The notes under the pieces: generated by a model
Seen by the model: the letters and a program-made list of their open reading frames with translations, nothing else
Told to the model about the DNA's origin: nothing
Database searches by the model: none
NCBI GenBank assembly: GCA_950097015.1
Contig: CATNEN010000007.1
Coordinates: forward strand, 4,588,001-4,652,000
Reading direction: 5' to 3'
DNA: 64,000 nucleotides
Source of the DNA: Macrostomum hystrix
Lineage: Eukaryota; Animalia; Platyhelminthes
Translations under genes and position numbers: made by a program
Shown here: piece by piece, positions 5,105 to 61,049 of the stretch
Layout of the letters: each line of letters starts with the position of its first letter
Position numbering within the stretch: position 1 is the stretch's first letter

Positions 5105-5850
5105 CAATCTCCATCCACCCCATCTCCATCTCCATCCACCCATCTCCATCTCCTTCCACCCATCTCCATCCACCCATCTCCATCCACCCATCTCCATCCA
5201 CCCATCTCCATCCACCCATCTCCATCCACCCATCTCCATCCACCTATCTCCATCCACCCATCTCCATCCACCCATCTCCATCCACCCATCTCCATCCACC
5301 CATCTCCATCCACCCATCTGCTTCCACCCCATCTCCATCTCCTTCCACCCCCATCTCCATCTTCATCCACCCCATCTCCATCTCCTTCCACCCCATCTCC
5401 ATCTCCTTCCATCCCCATCTCCATCTTCATCCGCCCCATCTCCATCTCCTTCCATACCCATCTCCTTCTCCTTCCACCCCATCTCCGTCTCCTTCCATAC
5501 CCATCTCCTTCTCCTTCCACCCCATCCCATCTCCTTCCACCCCATTCCATCTCCTTCCACCCCATCCCATCTCCTTCCACCCCATCCCATCTTCATCCGC
5601 CCCATCTCCATCCGCCCCATCCTCATCCGCCCTATCGCCATCCGCCCTGTCTCCATCCGCCCCATCTCCATCTCCTTCCACCCCCATCTCCATCTTCATC
5701 CGCCCCATCTCCATCTCCTTCCACCCCATTCCATCTCCTTCCACCCCATCCCATCTTCATCCGCCCCATCTTCATCCGCCCCATCTTCATCCGCCCCATC
5801 TTCATCCGCCCTATCGCCATCCGCCCTGTCTCCATCCCGCCTCTTCGCCC
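5105..5850. repeat. C-rich low-complexity repeat (CCATCT / CCACC units)
   Basis: Nearly G-free plus strand built from CCATCTCCATCCACC-like units. Confidence 0.9.
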
Positions 5851-6714
5851 AGCTGGCAGCCTCATGATATTCCTTTAGGCCTTTGAATAAGGCACAAAAT
5901 GTCTCTTTTGTTCTCTCATCGCCTTTTCGCCAGCTCCTCCCTCCCCCTCCTTGCCAGCCTGTCTGGCCGCAGAGCCACTCAAAAATGCAAGTGTAAATAC
6001 CGAAAGCGGTGCTTAAAGTGGCAAGCAGCCGCAGTACCCAAACAGAAGTATACCAGAGTTGAAACCAGCATCAAATTGAAATGGCTGAATTATGAATGCA
6101 CTGGGAGGAGAGAAGCTATGAGGTTGATGCGGAGCGGATACAGACTCTATTCTCCTTGAATGCCAGGATATGCTCTAAATTCCTTTCTTGGGAGTCACTA
6201 ACTCGGCACAGCGCTTCAACTGCAGATTTTTGGAATTTGAGAAATTAGTGATTTTGTTTAAATGGCAGTTACCGTAAAATTCTCGAAAGAATGAACTCGA
6301 GGTGAGTTTAGGCTAGCAACACGTTCACTCTAATTAATAATAGTAACAGTTGACTAGCAACCAACACCCCCTTTGGGGGAAGAAAATCACGCCGTATAGA
6401 GGAGAAAAAATGATCAACAAGATTGAACTTGAATGCCATACTTATATCTTCTCGATATTGCAATCATGCTGCCCCTTTCATATATCATGCCATCCTTCGA
6501 CAAAGCATGCAACCCCCTCGACAAAGCATGCCTTCTCAACCTTCTCAAAAAAGCTTGCCACCCCTCGATAATTAATGCTCCCGTCAAATTATGCGACTCT
6601 TAACATTGAATGAAGTTTCCGCAATAATTGACGCTGTTCCCTCGAAAATGTATGCTTTCCGTCAATAATATATGCTGCACCCTAAATTAATTATGCTGCC
6701 CCATTGACAAATTA

Positions 6715-13250: not shown

Positions 13251-14930
13251 AGGTTAGCATGTGATCTTGATCTGTGTAGTGAGTTTGATCTTGAGTATCA
13301 CATTGATTCGGTGTCCCAATGATTTTCTTTAGAACCAGTTGACGCACCAAACTGGTAAAATCGAATGGGCCAATTCTGCTACTCACAAGTAGCAAAACGC
13401 GACAACAGCGGCTGAAAATACTTCCTCACTCCTACAAAGAAGCTAGTCGCGTTCCGAGAGAAGAAATAAGAATTGAAGCGACCAAGAAAGAGCGAGTGGG
13501 GCCATTGCAGGCCAGGAGCGCAACAGCTGCGCATTTGTAGTAAAAAACCGCAGCAGGCCCGCCAAGCACACTTCAGCTGCCGCATCCGCCACCAGCTGAC
13601 CCGTTTCGCTACGCAGCCAGCGCTTCTAACAGGGCTAAAATTAGGCATCTCAGAGCCTCCCCCTCCAGTGAGTGACAGCTTTGACGCTCGCAGTAGCGTG
13701 ATTGAGCTGTTCCATTACTGACGGAGCTCACCAGAAAGCAGGAGGTACTACTGAGGTGCTGCAGGAACGTTAGAATTCCGGCCCAGAGGGTCAATTAAAG
13801 TCACTGTTTTGCTACAAAACATCGCAGCTTGCCGGGAGGAATTTATTTTTTTCTGTCGCAAATCTTGCTACAGCTGGGCAGAGCGAGTGCGAGTTTGTTT
13901 TCATTCCATGAAAAAGCAAGGCTGTAATTCGACATTTCGTAGATCTAGTCGCGAATCGACTGTCTCGGGCTCGCACCGGGGCTTCTGCAGTTAAACAAGT
14001 TTCAGGGCTGGAGCAGCCAGATGATGCTCGACTAGTCGGCCGGGATATTCTGGGATACAGCGATTTACAGGGAGCCACTGCTATCAGCTGGGTGGCAATC
14101 GGCGATATAGTTCGCTGGAAAATTGCCCTAAATATTGGGATTTTATTTCTTCAGCTACGCTAACCGTTCGCCTCCGCGATTCCTGCTTATCCCATCCGAT
14201 CCTCTCTGACCTTTCCACCGCGCGGCCTAGTTGAGGGGCCTGAGGGGAAGATGGGGGACTTGACTAAATTTACAACGAGCTGCTGCTGCTGCTGCGTAGG
14301 GAAAGCATAGAGAATGTAAGCGACTGGAGGGAGGCTGGCCAGGTTGCGGGATCGTTCAGCCCGCCGATGATGGCAAAGTTAGAACGCATTGAGGAACTGC
14401 ATAAACAATGCTGGAAACTGGAACGGCGAAACTGCGAAGCCCAGATCCCGATTTTCCTCGCTCTCCCCACTCCTTTGCGAGTTCGCCTGGCTTTCGTGCG
14501 ACCAGGGAGAGAGGAGGGAAGGGAGAGGAGGCGGATGGGGAGAAAGTCCGCTGCTAGGAAAAAGAGCGGATGAGGAGATGCGGGAGGCCAGCACAGCTGC
14601 GCGGAGGCATGGCAAGGCGATGGAGGGCCAGCGGCAGCAGCGGCAGGGCTGCCTTGGCTCACTGCCAGGACTTTGCAGAATCCATCAGCTGGTTGGGAGC
14701 CTGGGTCGCTGCGCACTTTGGTGGCAGGCCAGCTGTTGCTGGGGGACTGGTGTATGTAGGTGGGGTTAGGAACAGAAACTGGAAAGCTTTGGCCTGCTTG
14801 CAGTTGGAGATCGCTTCAATCAGTTTAGGGACTGACTGCTTTTTCTTCGCCAATGTCCTACCTGGTTTTGTGCCTTCACTCGACAGAAACACGGGTTCGA
14901 TCACTTCGCATTTCATTACCACCGCGGCGG

Positions 14931-17500: not shown

Positions 17501-19490
17501 TCAAATGGAGCCCTGAAAGTCGGTTCGAAACGACGGCAGATCGATGTCAGCCGCCAAAAGGAGGTCGGCTTCCTTCAGGCTGGACAAGAGGCCGTCAACG
17601 CTCGTGTCGGAGGCGTCAGTGTCCATCTGGCACGGACCGCCATCTGGAGGAGTTGGAAGGAGGCATTCTTGCTGGCATCGAGAGACCGTTGGGCTAATGA
17701 TATCCCAGACACTGGAACATGTGTCAGAGCATCACACCGATACTTGAATGGGTGTCAGACTTGAATGGGTATCAGACTTGAATGGGTGTCAGACTTGAAT
17801 GGGTGTCACACTTGAATGGGTGTCACACTTGAATGGGTGTCACACTTGAATGGGTGTCACACTTGAATGGGTGTCACTCTTGAATGGGTGTCAGACTTGA
17901 ATGGGTGTCACACTTGAATGGGTGTCACACTTGAATGGGTGTCAGACTTGAATGGGTGTCACACTTGAATGGGTGTCACACTTGAATGGGTATCAGACTT
18001 GAATGGGTGTCACACTTGAATGGGTGTCACACTTGAATGGGTGTCACACTTGAATGGGTGTCACACTTGAATGGGTATCAGACTTGAATGGGTGTCAGAC
18101 TTGAATGGGTGTCACACTTGAATGAGTGTCAGAGCATCACACCGATACTTCCATGCATCCGATACACCGATACATCCCATGGTAAACCCAAAGCTTTGTA
18201 CAGAAGAATTCGAGTAGTTTGCCGAAGTAAGCTTCACTCACCGAGCTCTAACAGCGGCGGCGTTGCCACAGACTCTGGCGCCAGTCCTGAGTCCGAGGAC
18301 TCCTGCCTGCGGTGATCGATGCCGAACACGCACTGGAGCGTTGGATCAGAGGCGACTCCACCGCTGCCACTGCTGCCTCCACTGTGATGGTGCTGCTTTA
18401 ACATCTCCTGCCGCATCAGCTGCTCCTGATGCAGCGAACGGTGGAAATAAATTCAAGAATAAGAAAACTGCAGACTCAAACAGAAAACACGGCTCAAAAG
18501 TGTCCACTCACATTCCTGGTGGCCATCTCCAGTTTGCGCCGCAGCTGCTCCTTCTGGGCGGTCAAGCAGCTCAGCTTACGGTGAGCGTTGCACCTGGCCA
18601 GGTAGTCCAGGTGCAGGCGGCAGACCTCGCTGGCTGACTGACCCCAGCCCGACTGCAGCTGGCGCGGAATGCGTGGGTCGTACCAACTGGTCGACTTGCT
18701 GTTGTGGTCCACAAAGTAGATCTTGTTCTCGTCGTTGAAGGCCATCTCCCAGCCGGCTGGCAGAGGGTGGATTTCGAACTCGGGCGGGCATGCGGGCGAC
18801 TCAGTGAACCTGCAGGCAAGACAAAAAGGAAAGCATGGAAACCGTATCGGAGTTTCAGTTTCTTTAATAATAGTTCACTTACGGCTCCCGCATGCCAGCG
18901 TCGGTAACGCTGGTCTGACGTTGCTGATGGTAGAAGGTCTGCTGACCGAGGCTAAATTGCTGCTGCTGCTGTTGCTGCATTGCCGCAGCCGCAGCCGCCG
19001 CAGCAGCCGCAGCAGCCTGGTTGGATATCTTGGCAGGAGAGGAATGAGCTCGCGTGTGTGATACGGAGGCCGCACCAGCAGCTGCAGAGTTAAAGGACAT
19101 TGCGGCAGCGTCGGTCCGCTGCATTAGCACGTTCGAGCCCGTTTCCATAGCAACTGACGATACAACGGCTGCAACAGCCGGCTGAAAAGAATTCCGCTGC
19201 ATCGGGGCCACCCCGGAGGCGCTGCGAAAGTGGCACCCCCCGATTGGGGGCGACACGCTCGGCTGCAGCACCACCGACTGGGGACTCGGGTCGAAAAAGG
19301 ATCGCGGCAGCTTCCTGTCCTTCAGTGGTTTGGCTGACGAAAGGGAGCAAGAGGGATCGTCGACTACCCTGAACATTTCTTCAAGGCTTTTGCTTGAGTC
19401 CTCTCTTGTGTGCACTTGGATATGGCCAGCATTGGCGGTGCTGGAACAGCCTCCACCGAGTTCCTCAGAGTACTGAGGAGGAAGCGCCAT
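17501..19490 (-). CDS. yap: Yorkie/YAP transcriptional co-activator (exons 19490-18883, 18809-18512, 18425-18242, 17643-17501)
   Basis: TEAD-binding segment (VHTREDS...LEEMF...RKLPRSFFDP), HTRAHSSPA (S127-type 14-3-3 site), one WW domain (LPAGWEM...YFVDHNSKSTSWYDPR), a coiled-coil segment, HRRQESSDSGL phosphodegron and an acidic C-terminus. Intron phases 2, 0, 1 are consistent. Confidence 0.92.
17752..18135. repeat. 17-bp minisatellite in YAP intron 3
   Basis: Unit ACTTGAATGGGTGTCAC/G, bracketed by a direct repeat GTGTCAGAGCATCACACCGATACTT. Confidence 0.95.
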
Positions 19491-20324
19491 TTTGCGTCTG
19501 CGAAAATAAAGATCTGACCGCTGGAGCGAACGGTGCGACTTTTAAATAACCCGCGGCTTTTGACGAACGTATTATAACAAAGGTGTGTTATTTATAATGT
19601 TGAATTAGCATGGTATAAAAACTTATTACACAAAAATGCAAAATGCTGCTAATTTTTTTTATATCCTGTTTGCTTTCTAGTACAAAATAAAAGCATTTTT
19701 TTATTTTCACCGAAAAAATCACGCCACAAGCATTACAATAAGCGGCTTGATTTTTTAACCTTCCTTCAGACAATCTTTCGAATCAACACAGCTTTCTGTG
19801 AAGGAAAAATATGATCAGAAAAATGGGAGCAGTGAGAGAACAAAAAATGAAAAAATTAAATTGGCTGGCTAAAGCCTTAGTGAGAATTATTTCAATAATG
19901 AATTGTCAATAAATTATCAATAATTATTTTAGCAATACATAAAGCTTAATTTATTACTGTAATTTTTTAATTTGCAGTAAAGAATAGAATGCCATCTACA
20001 AGAACCAAACATTAGTATAAATTTTATCCATTTTTTTTATTTGTCAAACATATTTTGTTTAACCTTTAAACTTTATTTATTAGATAGTCATTTTATTATC
20101 AAAACGTACATTACAAAATATACCATAGAAAAAAAGAAAACGAAAAAAGAGAATCAGAAAATTTATCTTTAAATGATATATGAATATGATTCATTTAAAA
20201 ATATTTGTGCTAAACAAGATGTACATGCCCTATATAGTGCGAACAATACACTAATACCTACGAGAATTGACACAAAAGTTATCATATCACTGCTGACAAC
20301 AGCTAAGCTAAAATAGTTGTAGAG

Positions 20325-21060
20325 GATGGACACCCAGTAGCAGATGATGGACACCGAATAGCTGAGAATGGACACCCAGTAGCAGAGGACGGACACCCAG
20401 TAGCAGAGGATGGACACTCGGTAGCAGCTGATGGACACCCAGTAGCAGATGATGGACACCCAGTAGCATATGATGGACACCGAATAGCTGAGGATAGACA
20501 CCCAGTAGCAGAGGATGGACACCCAGTAGCAGAGGATGGACACCCAGTAGCAGATGGTGGACACCCAGTAGCAGATGATGGACACCCAGTAGCAGAGGAT
20601 GGACACCCAGTAGCAGATGGTGGACACCCAGTAGCAGATGATGGACACCCAGTAGCAGAGGATGGACACCCAGTAGCAGATGATGGACACCGAATAGCTG
20701 AGGATGGACACCCAGTAGCAGAGGATGGACACCGAATAGCTGAGGATAGACACCCAGTAGCAGATGGTGGACACCCAGTAGCAGATGGTGTACACCCAGT
20801 AGCAGATGGTGGACACCCAGTAGCAGATGATGGACACCCAGTAGCAGAGGATGGACACCCAGTAGCAGATGATGGACACCGAATAGCTGAGGATGGACAC
20901 CCAGTAGCAGAGGATGGACACCGAATAGCTGAGGATGGACACCCAGTAGCAGATGGTGGACACCCAGTAGCAGATGGTGGACACCCAGTAGCAGATGGTG
21001 GACACCCAGTAGCAGATGGTGGACACCCAGTAGCAGATGGTGGACACCCAGTAGCAGATA
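20325..21060. repeat. 21-bp minisatellite
   Basis: Unit GGACACCCAGTAGCAGATGGT and variants. Confidence 0.95.
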
Positions 21061-21699
21061 TAAGACAGTTCCAATTTTGTTGAGAATCAGTTTTCACGTC
21101 AGTTGTCATGAAGCTTATTACTCGCTAAACTATTTTAATTGGGAGGCGTAATTTTGCGTCCGCTGAGATGAGGCGTGAATGTGGCTCACCTGTGGCTAAT
21201 CTAAAGTTAGCAACAAACAAACGTGACGAACAAACATTCTACCCAGATGACGCACTTGCTTCAAGACATTTCGATGAAAAGGTTAAACAATAGGTGGGCC
21301 AGTCTGGGTGAGAGATTGAGAACTACAATTCTCAGAAATCTGCTGCTCATGAAGCAATCTTCTCACCATAGATGATGAGCCGGGAATTCCGAAATTATGT
21401 ACAGCCACGTCGTGTAATTACTGTTTTCCATAGTTTAAAATAAGCTTTTTGAGTTCTGTTGTTGGAATTCATTTTACTCGTACTTAAAAGCATTAAAATG
21501 GCACATTGTATATACATTTCCAGGAAATTTGTGCGGTAATGAAACTGCTACCTGTGAAAAATTATAGGTGGAAAATATCCATGACATAATCAATTTCACG
21601 ATATAGACTTCAGAACTGTCATAATAGCTTTTCAGTTGAACCGTTTTTTAATTCCAAACACTTTCTTTTTCGCGACAAAATAGGTTGTTTTAAGTTTTA

Positions 21700-21780
21700 A
21701 GATGAGTACCTGAGGTGTCAGATGAGTACCTGAGGTGTCAGATGAGTACCTGAGGTGTCAGCTGAGTACCTGATATGTCA
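21700..21780. repeat. 20-bp tandem repeat, about 4 copies
   Basis: GATGAGTACCTGAGGTGTCA. Confidence 0.85.
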
Positions 21781-21951
21781 TAGGAGCTCGTACGTCTTTT
21801 GATTTGTCAAAGCGCCGGACATTGTCAACGGGGTGGACTTTTCACTCGCTGGCTCTGAAGCGCGCCATCCGACGCTGCCCTCATCTGTTACTTGTTGTTT
21901 TATCTCTACACTGCAGGAATAGGGTTAGGCCATAGACAGAAGCAGTCGGAA

Positions 21952-22280
21952 GGGGCCGTGGCAGAGCGGTTTAACGCGTTTCGAACCAAGTTCCCTAAAC
22001 TCGATTCTGCAGCGAGGCCGCATTCATTTGGGGTGCAGCAGCCGAGAGAAGGTTTGCTGGCCTGTCGTGCAATTCGCGCCCCCCTTTAGGGCCAACCTCC
22101 AAGGCACACTGAAAGTGTATACTGCCCGACAATGTAAAAGTCACACCTGTGTGAGCGTGTGCCTGCGTACAGTATCTGTGCGTGTGTGCTCAGGAGTCAG
22201 CGGAATGGGCAGAACCGCATCCTCACTGGCTGCGAGTCTAGTGTCACCAAACGATGTGCCAATGCCTGTAACCCTTCTAT
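21952..22280 (+). mobile_element. SINE family 1 copy
   Basis: GTGGCAGAGCGG A box, CTCGATTC B-box remnant, body shared with the 754 copy. Confidence 0.75.
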
Positions 22281-22365
22281 AGTTTTTTTTATTCTCGGCG
22301 GTGAAATCTCAGGTAGCAATGAACATTTGTTTCTCGGCCTTCCTAGTAGCCGCGACGGCACCCGC

Positions 22366-22663
22366 CTAGCAGACATCGAGCTGGCCGCCGCTGTCAGCCT
22401 GCTGCCCATCACCACGCCTGGGACCTGCGATTGCAGGGAGCCGCTTGATGCCTCGGGCGACCGCGCCCTGACTTTTCATCGCGGAGTCGAGCGGTTCCGG
22501 TGGCATGACGAGCTCAATGCGCGAATCCGTTGACCAGCTGGGTGAAGCTGGCTTCCCGGCGGTCCTGGAGCTCGCTGGCCTGTCCGGGAGCGACTCCTGC
22601 CTGTTCGAGGGCGTCACTGTGGTGGCACGAGCGGGATCTGCCGTTGGCCTGGGCGCCTGTCCG
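22366..22663 (-). CDS. Candidate terminal exon of an unidentified minus-strand gene
   Basis: GC-rich open frame after a TTTTCAG acceptor, TAG stop at 22366 and AATAAA about 75 nt downstream. No family recognised. Confidence 0.35.
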
Positions 22664-23174
22664 CTGAAAAAATTTTGACTTATTTTCACAGACCTTCACT
22701 TCTATAAAGTTGTGAAGTATAAGAAATGTTAACTAAAAACATCCTATTTTGTTTCATTCCTTTAAAAAAAATTAAGAGAAGATCACTTAAAACGATAATT
22801 AAGAAAACTCCCATACTTAGCTTGCTCAAACTTTATGCACATGTCTCCAGAATTTTCTATTCTAGCACCTGCAAAAGCAGGAATCAGACCCCGAAAATAG
22901 AATCAAAGGGGCAGGATAGGAATGGAAATTCCTTCCAACACAGCCGCAGGACTGCAGCTCAAACTTCTTCGCCATTGGATAGAAGGATTCATTATTGTTG
23001 TTATTAAACGAAAACAGCTGGACCACACTAGCACTGTCCTTCGAAAACTGAGTAGCCATTAGTAGGTGCTAACCCGCCTGAGCTCTGTGTGCGAGATCTG
23101 AACTGAAAACTGGAAGCTTGCCAACAACACTTGGAATTACCGACGGGTTAACCGACACCCCGACAAGGAATTCT

Positions 23175-23182
23175 TATAAATA
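23175..23182 (+). promoter_or_regulatory. TATA box of the secreted helical protein gene
   Basis: TATAAATA about 90 nt upstream of the ATG at 23264. Confidence 0.55.
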
Positions 23183-23263
23183 GCAGCCATCCTGTATGGC
23201 TAGCCAACACCAACCCGAAAGCCTGAGCCAGAAACTGCAGCCCCGAACAGAGAAGCTCGAGCC

Positions 23264-23857
23264 ATGCCAAGACACTCAGTTCTCGTGTTCGTGATTCTCG
23301 GCATCGCATTTTTGGCCACAACAGTCACAATGTCCGATGATTGTCTGCGACGCCTGCAAGGCGAAGCCGCCGAAATGCTGGTTGACGTGGTCGACGGCCT
23401 GCAAAGCATCGCGCGCCAACTGGAGCAGCGGCTGCCATCGGATTCGTCCTGCGGGCACCGGAAAAAGACTCTCCTGCCGACTGCGCCGCCCGCTGCAGCA
23501 GCCGAGTCCGCGGGCTCGGCCAATCGGAGGGCGCTGAGCACAGCGCTGGCCACGATGCAGTTTCTGAAAGCATTCGGACAGGCCGAGCAACACGAAGGCC
23601 TCCGGTCGTTGGCTGCAAACTCGGTGAAGACCGGGCGGCGCCTGTACGTGGCTTCCTGCCTGCTGGGACAGCTCAGCGGCGTCGGGGACTCTGCTCTGGC
23701 ACCGACGTCGCCACCACGGTGGCTCAGGCGGAATCCGCGGAGCACGGATCGGTACGTGCAGGACTACATCCTGTGCTGGAACTTGGCAAGGGTGCTGCTC
23801 AGATCGGCCAACGAGTTGGTGAACGGCACTCTGAGTGAGTATGCGCTGCAGCAATGA
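23264..23857 (+). CDS. Secreted 197-aa protein, putative long-chain four-helix cytokine (IL-6/CNTF/CLCF1-like)
   Basis: Hydrophobic signal peptide, four amphipathic segments with long AB and CD loops and a short BC loop, helix-D-like DYILCWNLARVLLRSANEL, four Cys, GC-rich coding composition and an upstream TATA box. Confidence 0.7.
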   Translation: MPRHSVLVFVILGIAFLATTVTMSDDCLRRLQGEAAEMLVDVVDGLQSIARQLEQRLPSDSSCGHRKKTLLPTAPPAAAAESAGSANRRALSTALATMQFLKAFGQAEQHEGLRSLAANSVKTGRRLYVASCLLGQLSGVGDSALAPTSPPRWLRRNPRSTDRYVQDYILCWNLARVLLRSANELVNGTLSEYALQQ

Positions 23858-25360
23858 GAATTCATAAATTCCTATTATAAATTATACGATTTCGTAAAAC
23901 CAGAGAATGTCCGCAAGAGACTACTTATGAGCGTCCTAAGTAGAATGTGATGAACATGAACTCCGCTTCTCAAACATTTCAGCCTACAGCCTGGCTGAGG
24001 CCTGCAAGTAGGGGTGCTGGATTTGCACGCGAGTTGGACAGATGAAATGAGATGCTTTGAGCTTGCTAACTTTTATGCGCCGTGACAGCACTGCTCTCGT
24101 GCGCAACCTATCTATTCAGATGGCACTGTTGTTGCATTACAGCCAATGCATGAACAAGGTTATATTTGAATTTATCACAGCAAGTACTTTGCCCACTCTA
24201 TGCTTTCCTCTGCAGGGATGTTCTTGTAATAGCTGGACTTCTTCAGGATTTTGTCAAACTACCGTGTGCTTATTAAACTGTACAGAGTAATTGTATTGTA
24301 GAGTACTCACAGCATTGTACATGTCCCCGTGAGCCTGTTAAGTCCTGTATTTGTGCTTCAATTAACTAAGCACATTGCTGCACAATCATTCAAAAAGAGT
24401 ATTCCAATTAAACTTCTTTGACTGAATTCCAATACATTATTTTATAGTTAATACCACAATATTATTTCACTCGTAATTTAGGCATAGGTGCATTACTTTC
24501 TAATAATAAGAAAGGCCAGATTCCAATAGGATATGATGAAGAGTGCTATTTTTCATTTGCTAGTAAACAATTCAGATCGTCTATATTTAAATAACACTGC
24601 ACTTATTGGGTAACAACGAAATCAACTTATTTGTCAGAGCAACTTTAAAAACAAATTCAATTTGACTAACTCGAAGATGACTGAAGCCATGGAAACGGAA
24701 AATTAACGTTAAATCGCTAAATTGTTGTCACGATTATATAGACAAGCTAAAAACACAATTGACAGGAGGATAAAAACGTGACGCGTCATTGGACACGCGT
24801 GACAACAGGCTAAAATCTGCTTATTTACAAAACCTGCAGCCCGCAGAATCTCTGAGAAACTGCAGACTCAGCCTCGGGATAAAATATAACAAATGGCTAA
24901 AATGATAGCAAAGATTTACTCAATTTAATATTAAGATAGTATTTACATTCATTCAAGACAAACTACATGTAAAAGACTGACACGAACTGCAATATTTCCA
25001 GCAGGTTATAACGAATTGTTAATTCGATGCCTCATTGTATAATGCAGATGCTTATTTTACCTTACCATTAAAAGCACTTTAATATATCAAACTAAAAATT
25101 GGTTGCCTGTTTATAGGCCCCCAAAAGCAACAAGTCACTATTGCTTGATAAAAAGCGGTCCTATAGTTTTGCCCATTCTGAACATGCAGACAGAAAAAAA
25201 CAAAGAAAACAAATTTTAAAAGAAAACAGGAACACAGATCTCGCAGTGAATGCTGTACACTTGTATGTAGCGAGAGAATTACTGAAGATTAAAGTATTTT
25301 TCTCTTTTGCAAGTTGTTTCTAAACTTGTTTAATAAAATCAGCTCTAAACTATATTATGA

Positions 25361-25768
25361 TTAGTTACCTGCCAGGTAGGATTCCGGAAACTGTCGGCCA
25401 TTTCGAAGGCAATAATAGCGGAATAGCAGCTGCAGTGTGGCTCGCACAGTGCTCAGACAACTGTTGAGCATGCCGCATTGGTCTGGCTGGTTGAGCTCGG
25501 TGGCCAGTGCGAGCCTGTCGGTTAGCAGCTGCTTGTACTCACGCAGGGCGGCGATTTCGCCAAGGAGGAGTCGCAGGCGCTGTTTTGACAAGCGCGTTGT
25601 TGTTGTCCCGGCTACCGTTTTGCCGTCGCTTGGTCGTCGACTCGCCGGCACTGCGGCGGGCTGCTTGCGGGACAGTCGCGAGACGGCACCGCTTCCAGGA
25701 CTCCGGGAACTGCGCGGAGGAGTGCGGTCTTGGCCGCCGCTGCTGACATGTCGACTGACTGGCTGCAT
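25361..25768 (-). CDS. Hypothetical 135-aa protein (S/R/P-rich N-terminus, helical-hairpin-like C-terminus)
   Basis: ATG-initiated GC-rich ORF in AT-rich surroundings with amphipathic LRLLLGEIAALREYKQLL...LSTVRATLQLLF. Confidence 0.45.
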   Translation of the reverse strand: MQPVSRHVSSGGQDRTPPRSSRSPGSGAVSRLSRKQPAAVPASRRPSDGKTVAGTTTTRLSKQRLRLLLGEIAALREYKQLLTDRLALATELNQPDQCGMLNSCLSTVRATLQLLFRYYCLRNGRQFPESYLAGN

Positions 25769-26970
25769 GGTTCGCTGTTAAATGAGCTAAGCCTGTTTTC
25801 TTGGTAGTTGCCGATTCCAATTCACTATAAGCCAAGCCAACCAGCTGGGGGCTGAGAGACCGCGCATTAAAAAGCCATGCCACCTCCATTTGGGGTTGGC
25901 GCTCTTCACCTCTATCCACTTTTCAGCCAATGTACATTCACCCCGTGTCTCTCATCCCTTTCCAAACCCCAACCCTTGTTCTATGCCCCTCGCTCTGATT
26001 GGCTTGGCTTTTCGTGGGCAGAGGTTTCGCCAAATTTTTGTTATCATTAAAAACTTTAAGTTAACGCAATGAGAAAATACATTGTGATGAAAACAATGTG
26101 TTTTACTCGTAAAAACTAAAAAAATTCGAAAGTAAAGTTGATGAAAAATATACATTAAAGCCCCGTGATTATGCTTTGTATTTTAACTGAATCATTTTTA
26201 GTCATATGTAGTCAGGCAATACTACAGGCTTTAATAAAGGAAACACTAAACGATTAGATCATTTAAATGATCTAATCTACTAGATGGGGCGTACTGATGA
26301 TGCAATTATGGATTGAATGGAAGGAACTGATGATGTAATGATAATAAAGTCAATTTTAAAAAACCGTTATCGGGAGAAAAATGTTTCTGGAATAAAGAAA
26401 GCTGAATTCGTTTAAACAACCGAGGTTAAAATGCCCTCTTTGCTCTTCACGAACGCTTCGATTCCGAACCTGTGTATTCACTCCACTTCCACTTGAACAA
26501 GTACAGGTTCACGACTCCCATGGCATGTGTACCTACTACTTGTAGAGCAAACTGGGTGTCACAGGTGGCAAGTGTGCAGTCAGTGTCCATTGCAAGCGAG
26601 AGTAACATTGCTGAGTCTACAGACGCCGGTGCAATGTGATGCAGATAAGAATAAATAATGAGAATTTCAATGCCAATAAAATATCCTTCGCTCAGTAACA
26701 AGTAAAACAGCAACACATCTGGACAAGCTTAAGGTACTCTTGAAACAAGGAGCTACGAATGTAACAAAGAATGAATGCAAATAATAATGCTTTCTGAACA
26801 ATAGCACTTTGGACAAGGACAGCCCTTAAAGTCGACCCTAATTGAAATATACCGACCTAAAAAGCCAGTAAACATTTATGCAACCAGAAAAGTATAATTA
26901 GGGTCGATTGTCAATTCATTCTCAAGCCATTGTTGAAAGGCCCACCACCAAATGGCTTCATAAACTCAAA

Positions 26971-28221
26971 TCAGTCGACGGCTTCTTCAAATGCCACCGC
27001 GTACGCGTCGACACGACAGTCCCCGTTTGATGGACAGCTCAGCAGCAGCAGCAACGCCTGGGCTCCATCGCCGACAAGGCGAACCGCGGCAGGCCGCTGG
27101 CCAGCCGTGCTGGCCCCGGTAGCCGCTGCAAGAGCCGCATTGGCAGCCCGCGTGCTGGCGGCCGCCAGACCCATGCTGCTGGCGTGGTAGACTAGCACGA
27201 GGCCGGCTCCAATGTCCGTGACGTACAGCTGGTCGCCACGCTCATCCAGGTGTAGGCCACAGGGCGATTGGCCTGCGTCGAAGGCCAGGTGGCAGAGCGG
27301 CATCAAAGTGAGCCAGTCGAACTTCACCACCCGGCGAGTCTCGGGGAAGGAGACCCACAGGCTGGTGAGGCCGTGGCTGTGCACGGTGAGGTAGTAGGGC
27401 ACGCCAAACTGGGCAACGTCTATGCTGCGAATTCTCTTCAACGCGGGCGCGGGTGTGTAGTGGTCGACGGCGAGACGGCGCGGGTTCGTCACCCAGCATT
27501 CGCCGCGGAAGTTAACTCGAACAGCAAACATGCCCGGCCTGGTCGGTCGAGTAGATTTTCCCTCGCTTTTCTGAACTGTCTGCCGCCGTTTTGGCGATGG
27601 TTCTTGTCGAGAGGCGACCAGTCGGCCGGTCCGATCGAACACGAATAGGCCGCAGCGTCCGGAGGCGCCGACTGCGGTGACGTAGACCAGGCCCGGCGTG
27701 GCGTCGATGCACAGCGGCACGCGCCTGCCAAGCTGCGCAGGCCAGCAGGCAGTGCCCGCAGTCCGGCCGTGCGGGGTCAGCGAGAATTCGGCCACATCCA
27801 AGCCGGGGACCAGCAGGCGGTCAGCTTGCACAGCGAAGTCGTAGGGGCAGCTCCAGGCGTTGAGGCGCATCGAGGCAAACGCCGCGGCGCTGCGAAGCCT
27901 GCGGCCAGGCGGAGGCAGTGGACGAAGATCGTAGGCGCCAGGCGAGCCGGAGCCGTCAACAAAGTCATCGTCAGTGGCCTCGCTGTCGCTGCGAGGACGC
28001 GAAGGACTGCGCGTCGTCTGACGTCGCCGGTCTCGGCTGCGGCTGCGGCTTTTGCCTAGCAGTCTTCGGCGCAGCTTGATTCTCTTGAAGAAGCCAACGA
28101 TAGCTGGCTGCTTTTTCTTTTTCTTTTGCTGCTGGGGATTTTCGTTGATTGGCCTCTCATCGTCGCTAGCTGGCTTGGCTTCTGGCCGCTCCTTGGTTCG
28201 GGAGCGCCAGGGCTTCAGCAT
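26971..28221 (-). CDS. NHL-repeat / beta-propeller protein with a basic RS-rich N-terminus
   Basis: 416-aa GC-rich ORF with blade-like motifs (PCGLHLDERGDQLYVTDIGAGLVLVY; PYYLTV...LWVSFPETRRVVKF; GLVYVTA). The true 5' end is uncertain. Confidence 0.72.
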   Translation of the reverse strand: MLKPWRSRTKERPEAKPASDDERPINENPQQQKKKKKQPAIVGFFKRIKLRRRLLGKSRSRSRDRRRQTTRSPSRPRSDSEATDDDFVDGSGSPGAYDLRPLPPPGRRLRSAAAFASMRLNAWSCPYDFAVQADRLLVPGLDVAEFSLTPHGRTAGTACWPAQLGRRVPLCIDATPGLVYVTAVGASGRCGLFVFDRTGRLVASRQEPSPKRRQTVQKSEGKSTRPTRPGMFAVRVNFRGECWVTNPRRLAVDHYTPAPALKRIRSIDVAQFGVPYYLTVHSHGLTSLWVSFPETRRVVKFDWLTLMPLCHLAFDAGQSPCGLHLDERGDQLYVTDIGAGLVLVYHASSMGLAAASTRAANAALAAATGASTAGQRPAAVRLVGDGAQALLLLLSCPSNGDCRVDAYAVAFEEAVD

Positions 28222-29068: not shown

Positions 29069-30316
29069 ATAGGCCCAGTCTTGAAGGTGCAGTAGTGGCC
29101 AGGGAAATAATAATAGAACAGTTAGTCTATGTGTACATTTGTAATATTCTGCGTGCCGTCTAAACTGCATCTGACTGGCGCACTCAAACTGATACAATGG
29201 CTAGGGCGTACGGCGAGATATTGTGAAGCTGGATGGAGAGAATAGCTGGCTCAGGCATAGTACAATTCTTCTAAATTAAAGCAACGGGGTGCATATAGGT
29301 GCTTGAGCCCAGATTGACAAACCGCAACACGAAAACTGCGACGCCTGAAGTCATCGATTTATAAAAAATTTCCAATTGGGAAGGCTAATTTCGAAACTAA
29401 GTAAAGTAACATTTGTGCCTCCTTTTATTTCAGCCATCCGAAACCCTCCTTTGATTTTCCATACTGACGCAGTTTTCGAGCTGTAAAATGTATTTATTCA
29501 TGCATGGAATAGCAGCTATATAGCAGGTTTAGCCTGTACTGAATATGGCTGCAGTAAATGACGACATTAAAAGGAAACTACATATATTTTTGGCCGCATA
29601 TTCCGCAGCCCAGGTGTAACCCGCAGAGCAAAAATGTGCTGTCAAAATTAAAAAGATATACGAGAAATTGTGATCATCCCTACTCTATAAGTGAATAAAA
29701 ACTTGTAAAGGTTTCCAAAATTATCGCAAGAAGGTGAATCAGAGACGGCTTGAATGTAGCATAAAAAGTCACTAATCAAAAAGTAAATATAGCCGAGCCA
29801 TTTCTGTAAACTAAATATTTATATGAAAAAATTGAACGTACCGATCAATAAACATAAATGTACAGTGCTTATATATGCTATCTTTATTAGAAAGTTGAAA
29901 TTGTTTAGGACTTCAGTGCGCAAAAATTCAATCCAATAAAACAAAATAAGAAAAGAAACTTGTGCATGATTTTCTGTCCATTTTTTTCGAAGCAGTTGGC
30001 GCTTTATAAAAATTACTTACCAATTTAAGAAACGTTCTTCTTTATTACTCATCTTACACGTTTCATCGACATCTTTAAATTGTCTAGAATATATAATAAT
30101 TATCGCGGTGATAAATGTATGCTCTGCGCAACGTCACATGAATGGTTGACTCCATTTAGCTTTTAACTATTTGACAGCTATTTGCTCTCATTGCATTCAT
30201 TAAGTTTTAATAAGTGAAAATTATCAATCAAGCATCAGCTGGATTGAGGGTTTTTACTTTCAGAGTTTATGTCTGCTTCAAGAATCCTGACAGTCATACG
30301 TATACAACTGTGCAAA

Positions 30317-33300
30317 ATGCGAACGATAGCTACAGCTTTAGGCTTATGCGTGATTGTTGTGTTGCTTTTCACACGATTTCACCTTGGTGCATCAGCAAAG
30401 GGACCAAAAGTTACAGACAAGGTAATTAGCTCTCGCTATTGCACTCCATTTCTAAATTAACTTTGATTTAATGATTTCATGTTTTAATTTCTTAATTAGT
30501 TTCATATTACCTCTTGATTTCTTATTACTCAAGGTGAATATAATCAGTTAGCCTAGCCTTTACTATCTTTACTTGTGTTTATATTTGTACTTATTTCCTA
30601 AAATTACCTAGCTAGACAACCTGTCCAGACAGTAGCTAGCCAATTCTGTTTGTGGCTCCTAATCTTGGTGTAAGTGCTTATTCCCATGGTCCCATTCCGA
30701 TATTTACAATTTTATCCACACGGATCCATGCCAATAATTTTCTGCTTATCTACATGTCAGCTTGTATAAATAGGTCTACCCTACCTATTCTTCTCTCAGC
30801 ATAAGGCTTTTGCTTCATAGTATAGTGTATACTGTACACCATCAATGCATAGTGTAAAAGAATAAAAATGATATATAATATGTGTGACAAGTTTGGTGCT
30901 GACTAGTAAGTAAGAAGACTGCAGTCTTTTACGTGGGGGCGAACATAAAGGGATTTCTACTCACTGCTATATTCTTTCCTGCATTTAGATGCACAAAAAA
31001 TGCACAAACGGAATATGCACTTGTTTTAATAAAAGCTATTCAAAAATCTCGACGCAAGCACTTTCTGCAAGGCGGTCGTTTTATCAATAAAAAGAAAAAC
31101 ATTTTTCTATGAATTGAACCTTTCCCTTTAGGCTCGAATTGAACAAATGTATTCGCGAAAACCAATGAAGGAACTATGGGTGAATAGAGACAGAAAGGTG
31201 GCATATGATATAAACAGCATAGTAAAGCATATTTCCCCTTAAATCGCAAGTCGACGGAAAAACGGCTCAAACAGAGGAACAAAATGCTCAATAAAAGAGT
31301 CAAAATCGTTTGGAAGCATTTAGAAGCTATATGGCTGCCTTGTGCCCCTAATCATACACACAACTGCAGTAAACTATGCCAATTTCAAGTTACACCACTA
31401 CACTGCAATTGACGAAACAATGCAACAACTGGACTGCAATCAAGGCAACAATTCAACAAACAGAGTGCAATCAACGGAATGATTCAACCACTGAAGTACA
31501 ATCAAAGAAATTTAATGCAAAAAATGTAATGCAAACGGAGCAGCAACATACTCGTATTAATTGCAATCTAAGCAAACGAATGCAACTGACATGTCAACAA
31601 GGGAACGTACGATATGAAATACAAACAAGCCAGCCATTTATTAAACTTGAATGAAATTCCAAATTACTGCATGCAACTGGAATACAATCAGCGAAATTTA
31701 CACAATTAAAAAGCGATTCGATGACTTAAAAAGTGGAGGCTATATGCACAGCATATAAGCAGCAATTAAATGCAATTTAAATGCAAAATTAAATTGACTA
31801 GGCCTATTGAGGGCTGGCTAAGACATTTTTTTAATTAGATTAAAACTAATCTTACAATAGCACCATTATGTGCTAGAGCAAATTTATAAAGGAGAATAAT
31901 GATTCATATGACTGGCCAAGTACATTAAAAGCAATTAAGTATAAATGCATAGAAAAGATAGGGAAAATATTACACAGCTTGAAGCAGACTTTTTGACCTG
32001 AATTTAAATATCTAAGATGTCATCACTTGCACAAAATTTGTGATGACTGTAACATAGTGTTAATTCAATAAAAAGGCATCCTACGTATTGAACATTATTA
32101 ATAAGACTTTGTAAGAGAATATAAATGCACTTTTTGTGCATATGGCATATACTTTCGAATACTGCAAGAAGTGAGTCAATAAAAGAGTATAATCAACATT
32201 ATCAACACGACAATGAAGACCGACATTTAAATGCGCATCAATTACATTATCCATGCAAAAGTAAAAAAAACCAGACAAATCAAAGGCCTGCGCGTGTGTG
32301 ATGTGACAAGCGTCAAAACACGTCCTGAAAGGCGATAATGTTCAAATAAAAAGTTTCAACGACACAAAGACGTGCGCGCTAAAAGGAAATGCAACATAAG
32401 GTGATTTCTACTGACTGCTACATTCCTTCCTGCATTTAGATGCACAAAAAATGCAGAAACTGAATATGCACTTGTTTTAATAAAAGCAATTCAAAAATCT
32501 CGACGCAAGCATTTTCTGCAAGGCGGTCGGTTTATCAATGAAGAAGCTAAAAAAGTTGCAATCATTTAGGATTTAATCATCAAAATGAAAACCGTTTGCC
32601 AAACGGCAAGCAACCAAAAAAAGTTTAACTACCACAGATACTGTTTATCATCAACGGAACTTGCAAAATCTTTCAATAGCAAATAACGGATGCTTCAAAA
32701 ATGATAGTGTCCAAAATTTGTACCCCTTACCTTCATGTACTCAATAGGATCCAGACACGACACACGTTAACCAATCTAGCCGTGTGAGATGTCGTTGGAA
32801 TGTAGACAACATTCCGCGTCGATTGAAGCCATCCGCGCTTAAAGCCATCAGGAATTCGCAGACTTATACACAAAAGTACACACAAATATGCACAATGTAC
32901 ACGCTGTGCATAATTACATTTTCAGGTACTAATCCTAACAGGTAATACGTGTATCGACGGCAGTATTTTTTCCATATACCCACATGGGATGTGCATCTTT
33001 AAATACCAAGCTCAAGGAGTATTACGCCCTTTTCGCCTCCAGCCGTAGGTTTGAGCACAGCAAAGTCTGCACCGGTCCCGAACCCGACCTTTCACCAGTC
33101 TGGGTGGACTTTCTCAGCCCGGGTAGGGCCGAAAGGTGCGCGCAATATCTTGTTAGACGCAAAACAATATTTCCAGTAGATTGACGCATCATTCGACAAA
33201 TTCGGAGCCGGATTTCGCGAAATGCGCGCGTCGAAAGGAGAAAAATACAAATTTTTCACGAAAGTGTATGTGCACTATTATGTACTTTTAATACACTTGC

Positions 33301-35561
33301 GATGTACTTTTATCAACGCCGACTCAGTATGTCATGTGCCCTAATGTTGTGCATACTACATCGCTTGCGGCTAAGCTGTCCGACTGTTTGTCTTCGAAAA
33401 AAAAATTTTTGACTCCACCAAGGTCGGCATGCATTTTCGAGAAAACGGCAAAAAATGCACGTTTTGCACTGCATTTCCCAGTACTGCTTGATAACCGTGC
33501 ATTGCATAGAGTCGCCTTGCATAGCGTCGTGTAGCAGGCATCCGTGCCGAATTTTTGACACCACTTGCGCAGTGCAACTACCTGCCATTCAGCTGCAGTA
33601 CCGTGCAGCACGCAAGTGTAAAATCTGGCTGCGCCATATTTTACACTTGCTTCATCAGATATCAGGCGCGCGGTACACTCGCAGTCCATTGAGTCACACC
33701 TCGCTGGAAAGAACTCACCGAGTAGGAAAAAAAGACACCACCCGCGTGACAATCGATTCAGCCCTTGGGGAGCTGCGCTGGAAAATGTAACCCAAAAAAT
33801 CAGTACCTAAAAGTATGTTTTTTGCACTTTTATCATAGACTATGAGGAAATTGAAAAATCGCTTTCCTGCCTCGCCTGGGCCAGGCCTGCCCGCAACTTT
33901 TGTGTCTCAACTTTTCTCCGTGCCAGAAAAAATGTGCGCTGGAAATGAGTTTGCGTAAAATCGATTTCCAAAAAATGGCAGTTTTACGTTGCCATGGCAA
34001 CCCTCACGGGTTGCCATGGCAACCAACCGCCATAAATCGGATAACCCTATAAGTTACCTACCCAACGACACCACCCGCGAGGCAAACGGTTGAGGCAGTC
34101 TCAAATGGCGCCCAATATGCATTGAAAATGCGTGATTTTCGAGGTGTTTTCTATCTCACTACGTACGCTGGATCTTAGGTGGGGCTCACTCCGATTTCGC
34201 CCCTCGGCCTCTACCGAGGCCTCGGTGCTCGGCGCTTCGCGCCTCGCGACTCAATACTACGTTCGCCCCCAACTAGAATTCTGCTGGTTGACTCGTATGA
34301 TTTTCTTTGTAGACTTCTTACTTTTTAAGCCAATACAATTCGAATGAAAACACGTAATGATGACAAAATATTTAGTAAGTTGTTATTACAATAATTAAAA
34401 AGGATGACATTAATGTCAATTAATGAATGTGTAGGTCGAAATGTAGAACACTGTCATAACACTGGCAACTTTGTCGATCTATTGGCTCAAGGGTTCAACA
34501 AAACGTTCAAACCTGAAAGGGCCTCGTTTCAAATAACAGAATGGTGTGGATAAAATTGAAATTAATGGCACAGCATATATAAATAGTTGTAGACCTATTC
34601 ATACAAGCTGCCATGTGGATAAGCAGAAAATTATTGGCATGGATCCATGTGGATAAAATTGAAATTATCTGCATGGGACTGTGGGAATTAGCTCTGCCAA
34701 TCTTGGTGACTTAAAATGATATATATGCAATTTTATGACAGGCATAAAGAACAAATACCTAACTCATGTATTCTGTCATATCTTTTACAAACCATATTTT
34801 GGTTTCTATTTTTAGGAAGCTAGGCTTTGAAATTTTTTGTTGTACTATGCAAAGCTTAATGGGAATTAGAGTTTGATAAGAATTAAGAAAATTCAACCCA
34901 GTGTTTTATTCAGTACATGGTTTATAATAAAGTATTTTTCTACTAATATAGTTTTTTATTATATAATTAAGCTAAGAAATGGAGGCCGAAATTTAGACAA
35001 TGACCACTGCAAACCTGGCAGGTGTTCTTCGACATCACAATTGGTGGCAAGCCAGCTGGTCGCATTGTGATTGGCCTATTCGGCGGCAGCGTGCCAAAGA
35101 CTGTGAAGAACTTCAAGTCCTTAGCCGAGGGCGTCAGCCAGGAGTCAGGCGGCATCATGGGCTACAAGGGATCTAAATTTCATCGCGTCATCAAGGGCTT
35201 CATGATCCAGGGCGGCGACTTCACCAAGGGCGACGGCACTGGCGGCAAGTCCATCTACGGCGACAAGTTCAAGGATGAGAACTTCAAGCTGAAGCACTAC
35301 GGCGCCGGCTGGTGCTCGATGGCCAACGCCGGTCCGGACACCAACGGCAGCCAGTTCTTCATCACCGTGGCGCGCACCCAGTGGCTGGACGGACGTCACG
35401 TTGTGTTCGGCAAAGTGCTGGAAGGCATGAGTGTCGTGCGCCAGATTGAGACCACGCCAACCAATCAGAATGACCGGCCGGCTGAGGACGTGATCATTGC
35501 CGATTGCGGCTCGCTGCCAGTTGACGAGCCATTCGCTGTGGAGAAGGCGCCCTCAGATTGA
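30317..35561 (+). CDS. ppib: Cyclophilin B, peptidyl-prolyl cis-trans isomerase (exons 30317-30421 and 35022-35561)
   Basis: Signal peptide + KGPKVTDK spliced in phase 0 to VFFDITIGG...[16 protein letters not shown]...[16 protein letters not shown]...[18 protein letters not shown] at 35746. Confidence 0.95.
30945..32540 (+). repeat. About 150-bp direct repeat pair (30945-31090 and 32392-32540) inside the MULE-like element
   Basis: Shared CCTGCATTTAGATGCACAAAAAATGCA...TCAAAAATCTCGACGCAAGCA...GCAAGGCGGTCG. Confidence 0.85.
33313..34256 (-). mobile_element. Hairpin-rich nested insertion, possibly a non-autonomous Helentron/Helitron-like element
   Basis: Minus-strand start TATTGAGTCGCGAGGCGCGAAGCGCC, related end TACTGAGTCGGCG, 13-bp perfect stem at 33612-33650 and two GTTGCCATGGCAAC palindromes. 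Confidence 0.4.
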
Positions 35562-60948: not shown

Positions 60949-61049
60949 ACAGACCGCTAGTGGTGTTGGACGTTGTAGAAACTTTCATTACAAAACTTTA
61001 AAACTCTTAACTTGTAGAAACTTTAAACCACACCGTACTGGTGGAAAAA

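What the first reader, a model, noticed from the sequence alone, without database searches (positions are those of the whole stretch)
23264..23857. Candidate invertebrate IL-6/CNTF/CLCF1-type long-chain helical cytokine
Seen in the sequence: a TATA box, an intronless ORF, a signal peptide and a mature region of about 175 aa. It has four amphipathic segments separated by a long Pro/Ala loop, a very short loop and a long Pro loop, which is the spacing expected of the up-up-down-down cytokine bundle. The last segment QDYILCWNLARVLLRSANEL matches the helix-D pattern of the gp130 family (as I recall it, CLCF1 DDFWLLKELQTWLWRSAKDF and CNTF ...RSIHDL), including RS-x-x-(D/E)-hydrophobic. JAK/STAT ligands outside vertebrates and insect Unpaired are poorly characterised, so this may be a missing ligand for a spiralian Domeless/gp130-like receptor.
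Basis: partly seen in the sequence, partly recalled or inferred. Interest (0 to 1): 0.85.

Follow-up and report, generated by a model that had tools for sequence, protein, structure and literature searches.

The report
Flatworm secreted four-helix cytokine-like gene
A real, expressed and previously unannotated gene of a Macrostomum flatworm encodes a small secreted all-helical protein that a protein language model places next to the IL-6/LIF/growth-hormone cytokines. Neither sequence searches nor structure prediction could confirm that it is one.

Summary
The ORF at 23264-23857(+) is a real gene, but it is not intronless. Contigs from three public runs join 23834 to 23983 across a GT..AG intron of 148 nt. 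This replaces the last 7 codons with TYSLAEACK, giving 199 aa and a fifth cysteine.

The genome is a Macrostomum flatworm. A collinear, intact, unannotated ortholog lies in M. lignano: 53% identity, same intron phase, same five cysteines, signal peptide, dibasic HRK[KR] and NGT site. dN/dS is about 0.32. The helices are conserved and the loops are not.

No homolog turned up in Pfam, PDB, a 5.8-billion-protein word search or an exhaustive phmmer of 1.84 billion representatives.

Three language-model searches (window protein, its mature part, the M. lignano ortholog) each returned only long-chain four-helix cytokine clusters: LIF/OSM, IL-6/G-CSF, CT-1/CNTF, IL-11, IL-12A, IL-23A and GH, at scores 0.90-0.94.

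AlphaFold2 gave four long helices with long-short-long connections, but pLDDT was only 44-48, and fold searches returned generic helical bundles. The fold test is therefore inconclusive.

Verdict: a lineage-restricted secreted helical protein and a plausible but unproven class-I helical cytokine. The scan found similar unproven candidates elsewhere in this genome.

The parts
23123..23147 (+). Conserved upstream non-coding block; its core CTTGGAATT is at 23130-23138
   Evidence: It aligns with both M. lignano copies about 40 nt upstream of their TATA box, while the surrounding DNA is poorly alignable. Its function was not tested.
23175..23182 (+). TATA box (TATAAATA)
   Evidence: M. lignano has TATATAAT at the aligned place, about 100 nt upstream of its ATG. 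Caveat: run contigs reach upstream to 23071, and an out-of-frame ATG lies at 23196-23198.
23264..23332 (+). Signal peptide, residues 1-23 (inferred)
   Evidence: Sequence inspection: a basic n-region, a 14-residue hydrophobic core and small residues at -3/-1. The M. lignano ortholog has a diverged but equivalent segment ending GQA|S. No predictor was run.
23264..23834 (+). Coding exon 1: codons 1-190 plus the first base of codon 191
   Evidence: ORF. Contigs of three runs cover it. tblastn to M. lignano L002 gives E=2.7e-50. Third-position identity is 0.46 against 0.62 and 0.68 at positions 1 and 2.
23336..23431 (+). Predicted helix A (residues 25-56); Cys27 at its start
   Evidence: DSSP of both AF2 models. 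62% identical to M. lignano. Amphipathic, P=0.003.
23432..23518 (+). Long AB connection (residues 57-85) with conserved Cys63 and the dibasic HRK[KR] motif
   Evidence: Low pLDDT and non-helical in both models. 38% identity with indels. SSC-x-HRK[KR]-x-LLP is conserved.
23519..23575 (+). Predicted helix B (residues 86-104)
   Evidence: NRRAL...QFL..F is conserved.
23600..23674 (+). Predicted helix C (residues 113-137); Cys132
   Evidence: The most conserved segment, 76% identity.
23675..23734 (+). Long CD connection (residues 138-157) with the conserved RWL
   Evidence: 30% identity, and indels between the species lie here.
23735..23833 (+). Predicted helix D (residues 158-190); Cys171, the conserved DYILCW and LVNGTL (N-glycosylation sequon), and the RSANEL motif
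   Evidence: RS of the motif is TA in M. lignano.
23835..23982 (+). Intron, 148 nt, GTGAGT...TTTCAG, phase 1
   Evidence: A joint 23834->23983 appears in contigs of runs X1 and X3, and the skipped part has no depth. M. lignano has the same donor context and phase, with a 302-nt intron.
23983..24011 (+). Coding exon 2: ...(T)YSLAEACK plus the stop TAG at 24009-24011
   Evidence: M. lignano reads SYILPDDCP plus a stop at the same position, and the penultimate Cys is conserved.
24012..24394 (+). 3' UTR, at least to 24394. ATTAAA at 24272-24277 and 24407-24412
   Evidence: Contigs 24083-24394 and 24159-24383. Motif scan. The end of the RNA is not determined.

Best explanation
This is a two-exon, TATA-associated gene, so far seen only in the genus Macrostomum. 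It encodes a 199-aa precursor. After removal of a signal peptide of about 23 residues, the product is a secreted, N-glycosylated, disulfide-bonded protein of about 176 aa. It is built of four long amphipathic helices joined by a long, a short and a long connection.

It most likely folds as an up-up-down-down four-helix bundle and acts as an extracellular signalling ligand of the long-chain class-I helical cytokine or hormone kind (IL-6/LIF/G-CSF/GH-like). Such a ligand would presumably engage a receptor with a cytokine-binding homology region.

Shown here: the gene, its splicing, its presence in run contigs that look like RNA, its conservation and selective constraint, and the helix/loop conservation pattern. 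Inferred: secretion, the bundle topology and the disulfides. One plausible pairing is Cys63 in the AB loop with Cys171 in helix D, as I recall for GH, prolactin, LIF and OSM. Another is Cys27 with Cys132 or Cys198. The receptor and any JAK/STAT output are also inferred.
For: Gene reality. ORF and GC3. A spliced GT..AG joint in 2 of 3 runs, with depth over genes only. An intact collinear ortholog in M. lignano contig NIVC01002292.1 with the same intron phase. dN 0.44 and dS 1.36, omega about 0.32, against omega about 0.17 for the neighbouring gene.

Architecture. Two AF2 runs place helices at about 25-56, 86-111, 113-137 and 158-190. Helices are 53-76% identical and loops 30-38%, and indels lie only in the signal peptide and the AB and CD loops. 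Five Cys, the NGT sequon and HRK[KR] are conserved.

Cytokine likeness. ESM-Atlas feature searches with the window protein (0.94, 214/256 shared), its mature part (0.93, 208/256) and the 53%-identical M. lignano ortholog (0.93, 209/256) were consistent. Every named family shown belongs to the long-chain 4-helix cytokines: LIF_OSM, IL6, GCSF, IL11, CNTF, IL12, IL23, Hormone_1. A mollusc cluster with IL6 hits in 11% of members also appears.
Against: No sequence or profile similarity to any cytokine or any other protein. Pfam gave 0 families at E<=10. PDB phmmer and a two-sequence profile found no cytokine. The 5.8-billion word search and the profile search gave nothing. Exhaustive phmmer gave only a spurious tandem-repeat hit.

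The Atlas 'recognition' values (2056 and 2113) are below the 2300 that 91% of known-family proteins reach. The tool warns that scores of 0.9 or more arise for 4-10% of shuffled proteins. A Leu/Ala/Arg/Ser-rich composition could drive the neighbours.

The helix-D motif is not conserved. Helices B and C are not significantly amphipathic.
Confidence: 0.45

Rival explanations
1. It is a secreted helical protein with a function that is not cytokine-like, for example a lipid or ligand carrier, a reproductive or seminal-fluid protein, an adhesive or a defence protein. It evolves fast in Macrostomum, and its likeness to cytokines is only that of any ~180-aa secreted Leu-rich helical protein.
For: No homology to any cytokine. 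dN is 2.6 times that of the neighbouring gene. The fold is not confirmed. Atlas recognition is below the level of known families. Earlier follow-ups of two other 'cytokine-like' helical gene pairs in this genome also found no proof.
Against: None of the named feature neighbours in three searches belongs to a carrier, apolipoprotein, saposin or other helical family. All are long-chain cytokines. The long-short-long loop pattern, with Cys in the AB loop and in helix D, is what the cytokine topology needs.
Confidence: 0.38
2. It is a prohormone cut at the conserved dibasic site after Cys63 (HRKK in this species, HRKR in M. lignano). Cutting would give either a two-chain disulfide-linked hormone or a separate N-terminal helical peptide of about 40 aa.
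For: The SSC-x-HRK[KR]-x-LLP motif is conserved inside an otherwise diverging loop. Cysteines lie on both sides of the site: 27 and 63 on one side, 132, 171 and 198 on the other.
Against: Conservation is spread over all four helices, not confined to one peptide flanked by cleavage sites. There is only one dibasic site and no amidation signal. Basic clusters in cytokine AB loops are common (my own knowledge). Cleavage would not exclude a bundle held together by disulfides.
Confidence: 0.12
3. It is a chance ORF in a GC-rich island, or a non-coding transcript.
For: Long ORFs also occur on the opposite strand (192 and 181 aa). No homolog is known outside the genus.
Against: The intron's GT..AG fixes the + strand. 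The ORF, intron phase, stop position and five Cys are kept across dS of about 1.4, with omega about 0.32 and the most change at third positions.
Confidence: 0.02

Closest known systems
IL-6/gp130 family long-chain helical cytokines (IL-6, IL-11, LIF, OSM, CNTF, CT-1, CLCF1; Pfam IL6, IL11, LIF_OSM, CNTF)
   Same: A size of about 175 aa once mature. A signal peptide. Four long helices with long AB, short BC and long CD connections. Cys in the AB loop and in helix D. Nearest language-model neighbours.
   Different: No detectable sequence or profile similarity. The RS-x-x-D/E helix-D motif is not conserved between the two Macrostomum species. No F-x-x-K at the start of helix D, a motif I recall from the LIFR-binding members. 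A different intron position: a single phase-1 intron 9 codons before the stop. The fold is unconfirmed.
Growth hormone/prolactin family (Pfam Hormone_1) and G-CSF
   Same: These are also among the feature neighbours; clusters carrying Hormone_1 account for 12-16 of the 60 nearest hits in each search. A possible AB-loop to helix-D disulfide, as I recall for GH and prolactin.
   Different: No Pfam match. No second small C-terminal disulfide loop. Known only from chordates.
Drosophila Unpaired (Upd1-3), the only well-established protostome ligands of a gp130-like receptor (Domeless)
   Same: They are secreted, glycosylated, predicted helical, fast-evolving and undetectable by sequence outside a narrow clade. 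If this gene is a cytokine it has the same status in flatworms.
   Different: The Upd proteins are about twice as long and very basic (my own knowledge). No similarity was tested or seen here.
Other 'cytokine-like' secreted helical gene pairs noted by this scan in the same Macrostomum genome (s1-084982, s1-085004)
   Same: Unannotated, expressed, conserved in M. lignano, secreted and all-helical, with no relatives elsewhere.
   Different: They lie on other pieces of the genome. Whether they are paralogs is unknown.

Membership tests
IL-6/gp130-type cytokines (Pfam IL6, IL11, LIF_OSM, CNTF; clan 4H_Cytokine) | A significant match to a family profile or to a solved member | tested here: not met
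   Pfam gave 0 families at E<=10. PDB phmmer and the 2-sequence profile gave no cytokine at E<=10.
IL-6/gp130-type cytokines | An up-up-down-down four-helix bundle with two long crossover connections | tested here: inconclusive
   RSANEL is present at residues 180-185 of the window protein, but the M. lignano ortholog reads TAANDL. The shuffle probability in the last 45 aa is 0.008, but the motif was chosen after the fact.
LIFR-binding subgroup (LIF, CNTF, CT-1, CLCF1, OSM) | F-x-x-K at the N-terminal end of helix D (site III; recalled from the literature, not retrieved here) | tested here: not met
   The start of helix D reads DRYVQDYILCW in the window and QRYKRDYILCW in M. lignano. Neither has F-x-x-K.
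IL-6/gp130-type cytokines | Binds a receptor with a cytokine-binding homology region and activates JAK/STAT | not testable with these tools
   First-stage notes list gp130/Domeless-like, JAK-like and STAT candidates on other pieces of this genome. None of them has been checked.
Secreted protein | A cleavable N-terminal signal peptide and no other membrane segment | tested here: met
   By inspection only. Both orthologs have an n-h-c organisation despite 13% identity in that segment. No dedicated predictor was available.
Growth hormone/prolactin (Pfam Hormone_1) | A match to the family profile | tested here: not met
   No Pfam hit. It appears only as a language-model neighbour.

The most novel reading that the evidence does not exclude
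This is a genuine flatworm class-I long-chain helical cytokine. It would be the first such ligand recognised in Platyhelminthes, and the first in Spiralia as far as the literature found here shows. It would signal through one of the gp130/Domeless-like receptors of Macrostomum to JAK/STAT. Helical cytokine ligands would then be ancestral to bilaterians and simply too fast-evolving to be seen by sequence.
Probability: 0.25. Interest if true: 0.85.

Novelty: new variant of a known kind. Interest (0 to 1): 0.55.

Why it matters
Outside vertebrates, the only well-established helical ligands of gp130-like receptors are the insect Unpaired proteins. A 2026 survey states that IL-6-like ligands have still not been found in most invertebrates, and that the JAK/STAT status of Platyhelminthes is unclear (PMC13203501). 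Planarians do have a STAT that is induced in the dsRNA response, and the authors of that work ask whether a secreted interferon-like factor exists (PMC8797187).

A testable ligand candidate in Macrostomum lignano would make that question directly addressable. M. lignano is, to my knowledge, a transgenic and RNAi-tractable regeneration model, and it carries an intact ortholog. Even if the protein is not a cytokine, it is a conserved secreted protein that the M. lignano annotation misses.

Tried and rejected
1. Word-based homolog search with the protein and with the two-species profile: nothing.

2. Exhaustive phmmer of 1.84 billion representatives: one hit, P0001. It is a 976-aa tandem-repeat ORF that matches 12 times over a 29-residue low-complexity stretch, and I rejected it as spurious.

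3. Exact look-up of the protein in public assemblies: not on record.

4. Pfam and PDB by sequence, for the whole protein, the profile and the helix-D and helix-A/AB pieces: no cytokine. The only hit was a chance 39-residue match to a carbohydrate-binding protein at E=0.54.

5. AF2 from the single sequence and from the 2-sequence alignment of the mature parts: pLDDT 44 and 48. Foldseek/PDB, VIA-align wide and Atlas shape searches on both or either model: generic helices only. I do not count this as evidence against the cytokine fold, because the models are unreliable.

6. tblastn for paralogs inside the window: none.

7. The first M. lignano copy found (L001) looked like a pseudogene with three frame breaks. 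I rejected that reading. Over the coding exon it differs from the intact L002 copy only by four single-base deletions, with no substitution, which is the signature of consensus indel errors.

8. Rfam over the whole window: nothing.

9. A search of the scan's findings by sequence: blank.

10. I did not run profile-profile comparison with cytokine families. No tool gave me cytokine sequences, and I did not type any from memory.

Full report
**Observation**

The window holds an ATG ORF of 197 aa at 23264-23857 on the + strand. It sits in a GC-rich island (0.56) within a repeat-rich, AT-poorer eukaryotic sequence. Its GC3 is 0.74, close to the 0.77 of the cyclophilin gene at 35022-35561. TATAAATA lies at 23175-23182. 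The N-terminus (MPRH, then SVLVFVILGIAFLA, then TTVT|M) has the form of a signal peptide.

**Transcript and gene model**

Three public runs of one study hold the stretch. Laid on 21000-26900, their contigs cover only 23071-24394 and 26157 onward, plus a high-copy element at about 21985-22378. They do not cover the intergenic DNA. In two of the three runs a contig joins 23834 to 23983. The skipped 148 nt begin GTGAGT and end TTTCAG, and the depth in the bin over the intron is fully explained by the flanking exon parts.

The record does not say that the runs are RNA, but this pattern is that of RNA. The GT..AG fixes the + strand. The gene is therefore not intronless. Splicing replaces the last seven codons of the ORF, and the product is 199 aa ending ...LVNGTL-TYSLAEACK, with a stop at 24009-24011. 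The contigs reach upstream of the TATA box to 23071. An out-of-frame ATG lies at 23196, so the transcription start is unsettled.

**Organism and ortholog**

Earlier notes of the scan call this genome a Macrostomum flatworm. I checked this. The neighbouring 416-aa protein (26971-28221, - strand) is 73% identical to M. lignano BOX15_Mlig007223g3.

I fetched the two M. lignano contigs that carry that gene. tblastn found the candidate's ortholog on both, in the expected place and orientation. The region is collinear over about 12 kb: candidate, a 135-aa ORF, the 416-aa gene, then cyclophilin.

On L002 (NIVC01002292.1) the ortholog is intact, an unspliced ORF of 205 aa at 18302-18919(-). It has the same donor context (TTA A|GTGAGT), the same phase and a 302-nt intron. 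Its second exon reads SYILPDDCP followed by a stop at the same position. No gene is called there in the M. lignano record.

The L001 copy at first looked broken. Over the coding exon it differs from L002 only by four single-base deletions and no substitution. I read these as assembly errors.

**Conservation**

The two proteins are 53% identical. dN is 0.44 and dS 1.36, so omega is about 0.32. For the neighbouring gene dN is 0.168 and dS 1.01. Identity at codon positions 1, 2 and 3 is 0.62, 0.68 and 0.46. This is a protein-coding gene under purifying selection that evolves about 2.6 times faster than its neighbour.

The following are conserved:
- All five cysteines (27, 63, 132, 171, 198).
- The dibasic motif after Cys63 (SSC-x-HRK[KR]-x-LLP).
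- RWL before helix D.
- DYILCW.
- The LVNGTL sequon.

The predicted helices are 53-76% identical and the two long loops 30-38%. Indels lie only in the signal peptide and in the AB and CD loops. Upstream, the TATA box and a block around CTTGGAATT (23130-23138) are also conserved.

**Searches for relatives**

- Pfam: nothing at E<=10.
- Word-based search of 5.8 billion proteins: nothing.
- The same search with the two-species profile: nothing at E<=1.
- Exhaustive phmmer over 1.84 billion representatives: one hit, a tandem-repeat artefact.
- PDB by sequence, for the whole protein, the profile, the helix-D piece and the helix-A/AB piece: no cytokine at E<=10.

By sequence the family has no detectable relatives outside Macrostomum.

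**Fold**

AlphaFold2 was run on the single sequence and on the two-sequence alignment of the mature parts. It gives long helices at about 25-56, 86-111, 113-137 and 158-190, with non-helical stretches at about 57-85 and 138-157. That is the long-short-long connection pattern an up-up-down-down bundle needs. Confidence is low, however: pLDDT 44 and 48, pTM 0.33-0.34.

**Language-model features**

I made three searches of the ESM Atlas by features:
- The window protein: first hit 0.94, 214 of 256 features shared.
- Its mature part without the signal peptide: 0.93, 208 shared.
- The 53%-identical M. lignano ortholog: 0.93, 209 shared.

Among named clusters they returned only long-chain four-helix cytokines: LIF/OSM, IL-6-like, G-CSF-like, IL-11, CT-1/CNTF, IL-12A, IL-23A and GH/Hormone_1. 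They also returned a mollusc cluster in which 11% of members hit Pfam IL6, and an unnamed arthropod cluster.

This is the only positive evidence for cytokine likeness, and it is lead-grade. The tool's 'recognition' values (2056 and 2113) are below the level that known families usually reach. Scores of 0.9 or more arise for 4-10% of shuffled proteins. The three searches are not independent. A Leu/Ala/Arg/Ser-rich secreted helical composition could contribute. The result does not separate the gp130 type from the GH/prolactin type.

**The helix-D motif**

RSANEL (residues 180-185) fits RS-x-x-[DE]-hydrophobic, and shuffles place such a motif in the last 45 residues in 0.8% of trials. But the motif was picked after seeing the sequence. 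The M. lignano ortholog reads TAANDL, and no cytokine helix D is found by phmmer. The F-x-x-K motif that I recall for the LIFR-binding members is absent in both species. I give the motif no weight.

**Interpretation**

The gene-level facts are solid. The most likely reading (0.45) is a secreted, disulfide-bonded four-helix ligand of the long-chain helical cytokine or hormone kind.

The cysteine layout would allow an AB-loop to helix-D disulfide (63-171), as I recall for GH, prolactin, LIF and OSM. It would also allow a tie from the N-terminus to the end of helix C or to the C-terminus (27-132 or 27-198), leaving one cysteine free or available for a dimer. This is inference only.

The main rival (0.38) is a secreted helical protein of unrelated function. 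A processed two-chain prohormone cut at HRK[KR] (0.12) is a variant worth testing. A chance ORF is excluded in practice.

**Context**

A 2026 survey reports no IL-6-like ligand in invertebrates apart from Upd and a shrimp lectin, and unclear JAK/STAT status in Platyhelminthes (PMC13203501). Planarians have a dsRNA-induced STAT, and a secreted upstream factor has been asked for (PMC8797187).

First-stage notes of this scan list gp130/Domeless-like, JAK-like and STAT candidates elsewhere in this genome. They also list two other 'cytokine-like' helical gene pairs that follow-up agents found real but unproven. I tested none of these.

**Limits**

- I had no way to obtain cytokine family alignments for profile-profile comparison and typed none from memory.
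- No signal-peptide predictor was available.
- The runs are contigs, so transcript ends, strand and expression level cannot be read from them.

Noticed in passing
window 25361-25768 (-): A 135-aa ORF with no Pfam match is conserved with M. lignano (blastn 71% over 202 nt; tblastx 67%). It corresponds to a called 147-aa gene on L001 at 13547-13990. None of the three runs covers it.
   Followed up: partly
window 26971-28221 (-), transcript to about 26157: A 416-aa protein with no Pfam domain is 73% identical to M. lignano hypothetical BOX15_Mlig007223 (copies g1 and g3). Contigs of all three runs cover it at higher depth than the candidate.
   Followed up: partly
window 21985-22378: Short contigs at very high depth (hundreds to about 1,700x), with many different loose ends, pile up at 22142-22214. 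This looks like a high-copy, transcribed repeat family. There is no Rfam match.
   Followed up: no
L001 19392-19971 (-) against L002 18337-18919 (-): The two M. lignano copies of the gene are identical in the coding exon except for four single-base deletions in L001. These break the frame three times. They are probably consensus indel errors of the long-read assembly, not a pseudogene.
   Followed up: yes
window 23123-23147: A conserved non-coding block (core CTTGGAATT) lies about 40 nt upstream of the conserved TATA box in both species. It could be a transcription-factor site. No motif test was done.
   Followed up: partly
window 30265-30429 and 35021-35559 (+): The cyclophilin ORF at 35022-35561 is not a whole intronless gene. 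tblastx to the M. lignano Pro_isomerase gene (230-aa product) also matches a further exon about 4.6 kb upstream, at 30265-30429.
   Followed up: partly
L001 12131-13057 and L002 12141-13099: M. lignano has a WSC-domain gene between the 416-aa gene and the 147-aa gene. tblastx finds no counterpart in the window at E<1e-6, so it has been lost, has diverged or was never gained.
   Followed up: no
window 4800-8900, 20170-21110, 40640-43160, 44570-45040, 54120-54870, 58030-58960, 61000-61940: Long tandem-repeat arrays give open reading frames in several frames on both strands. All of the longest 'ORFs' in the window are of this kind.
   Followed up: no
window 18879-19490 (-): A 203-aa Ala/Gln-rich ORF has a weak match (E=4e-4, below Pfam's cut-off) to the TEAD-interacting motif TEADIR3. 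It could be a Vestigial/Tondu-like cofactor.
   Followed up: no
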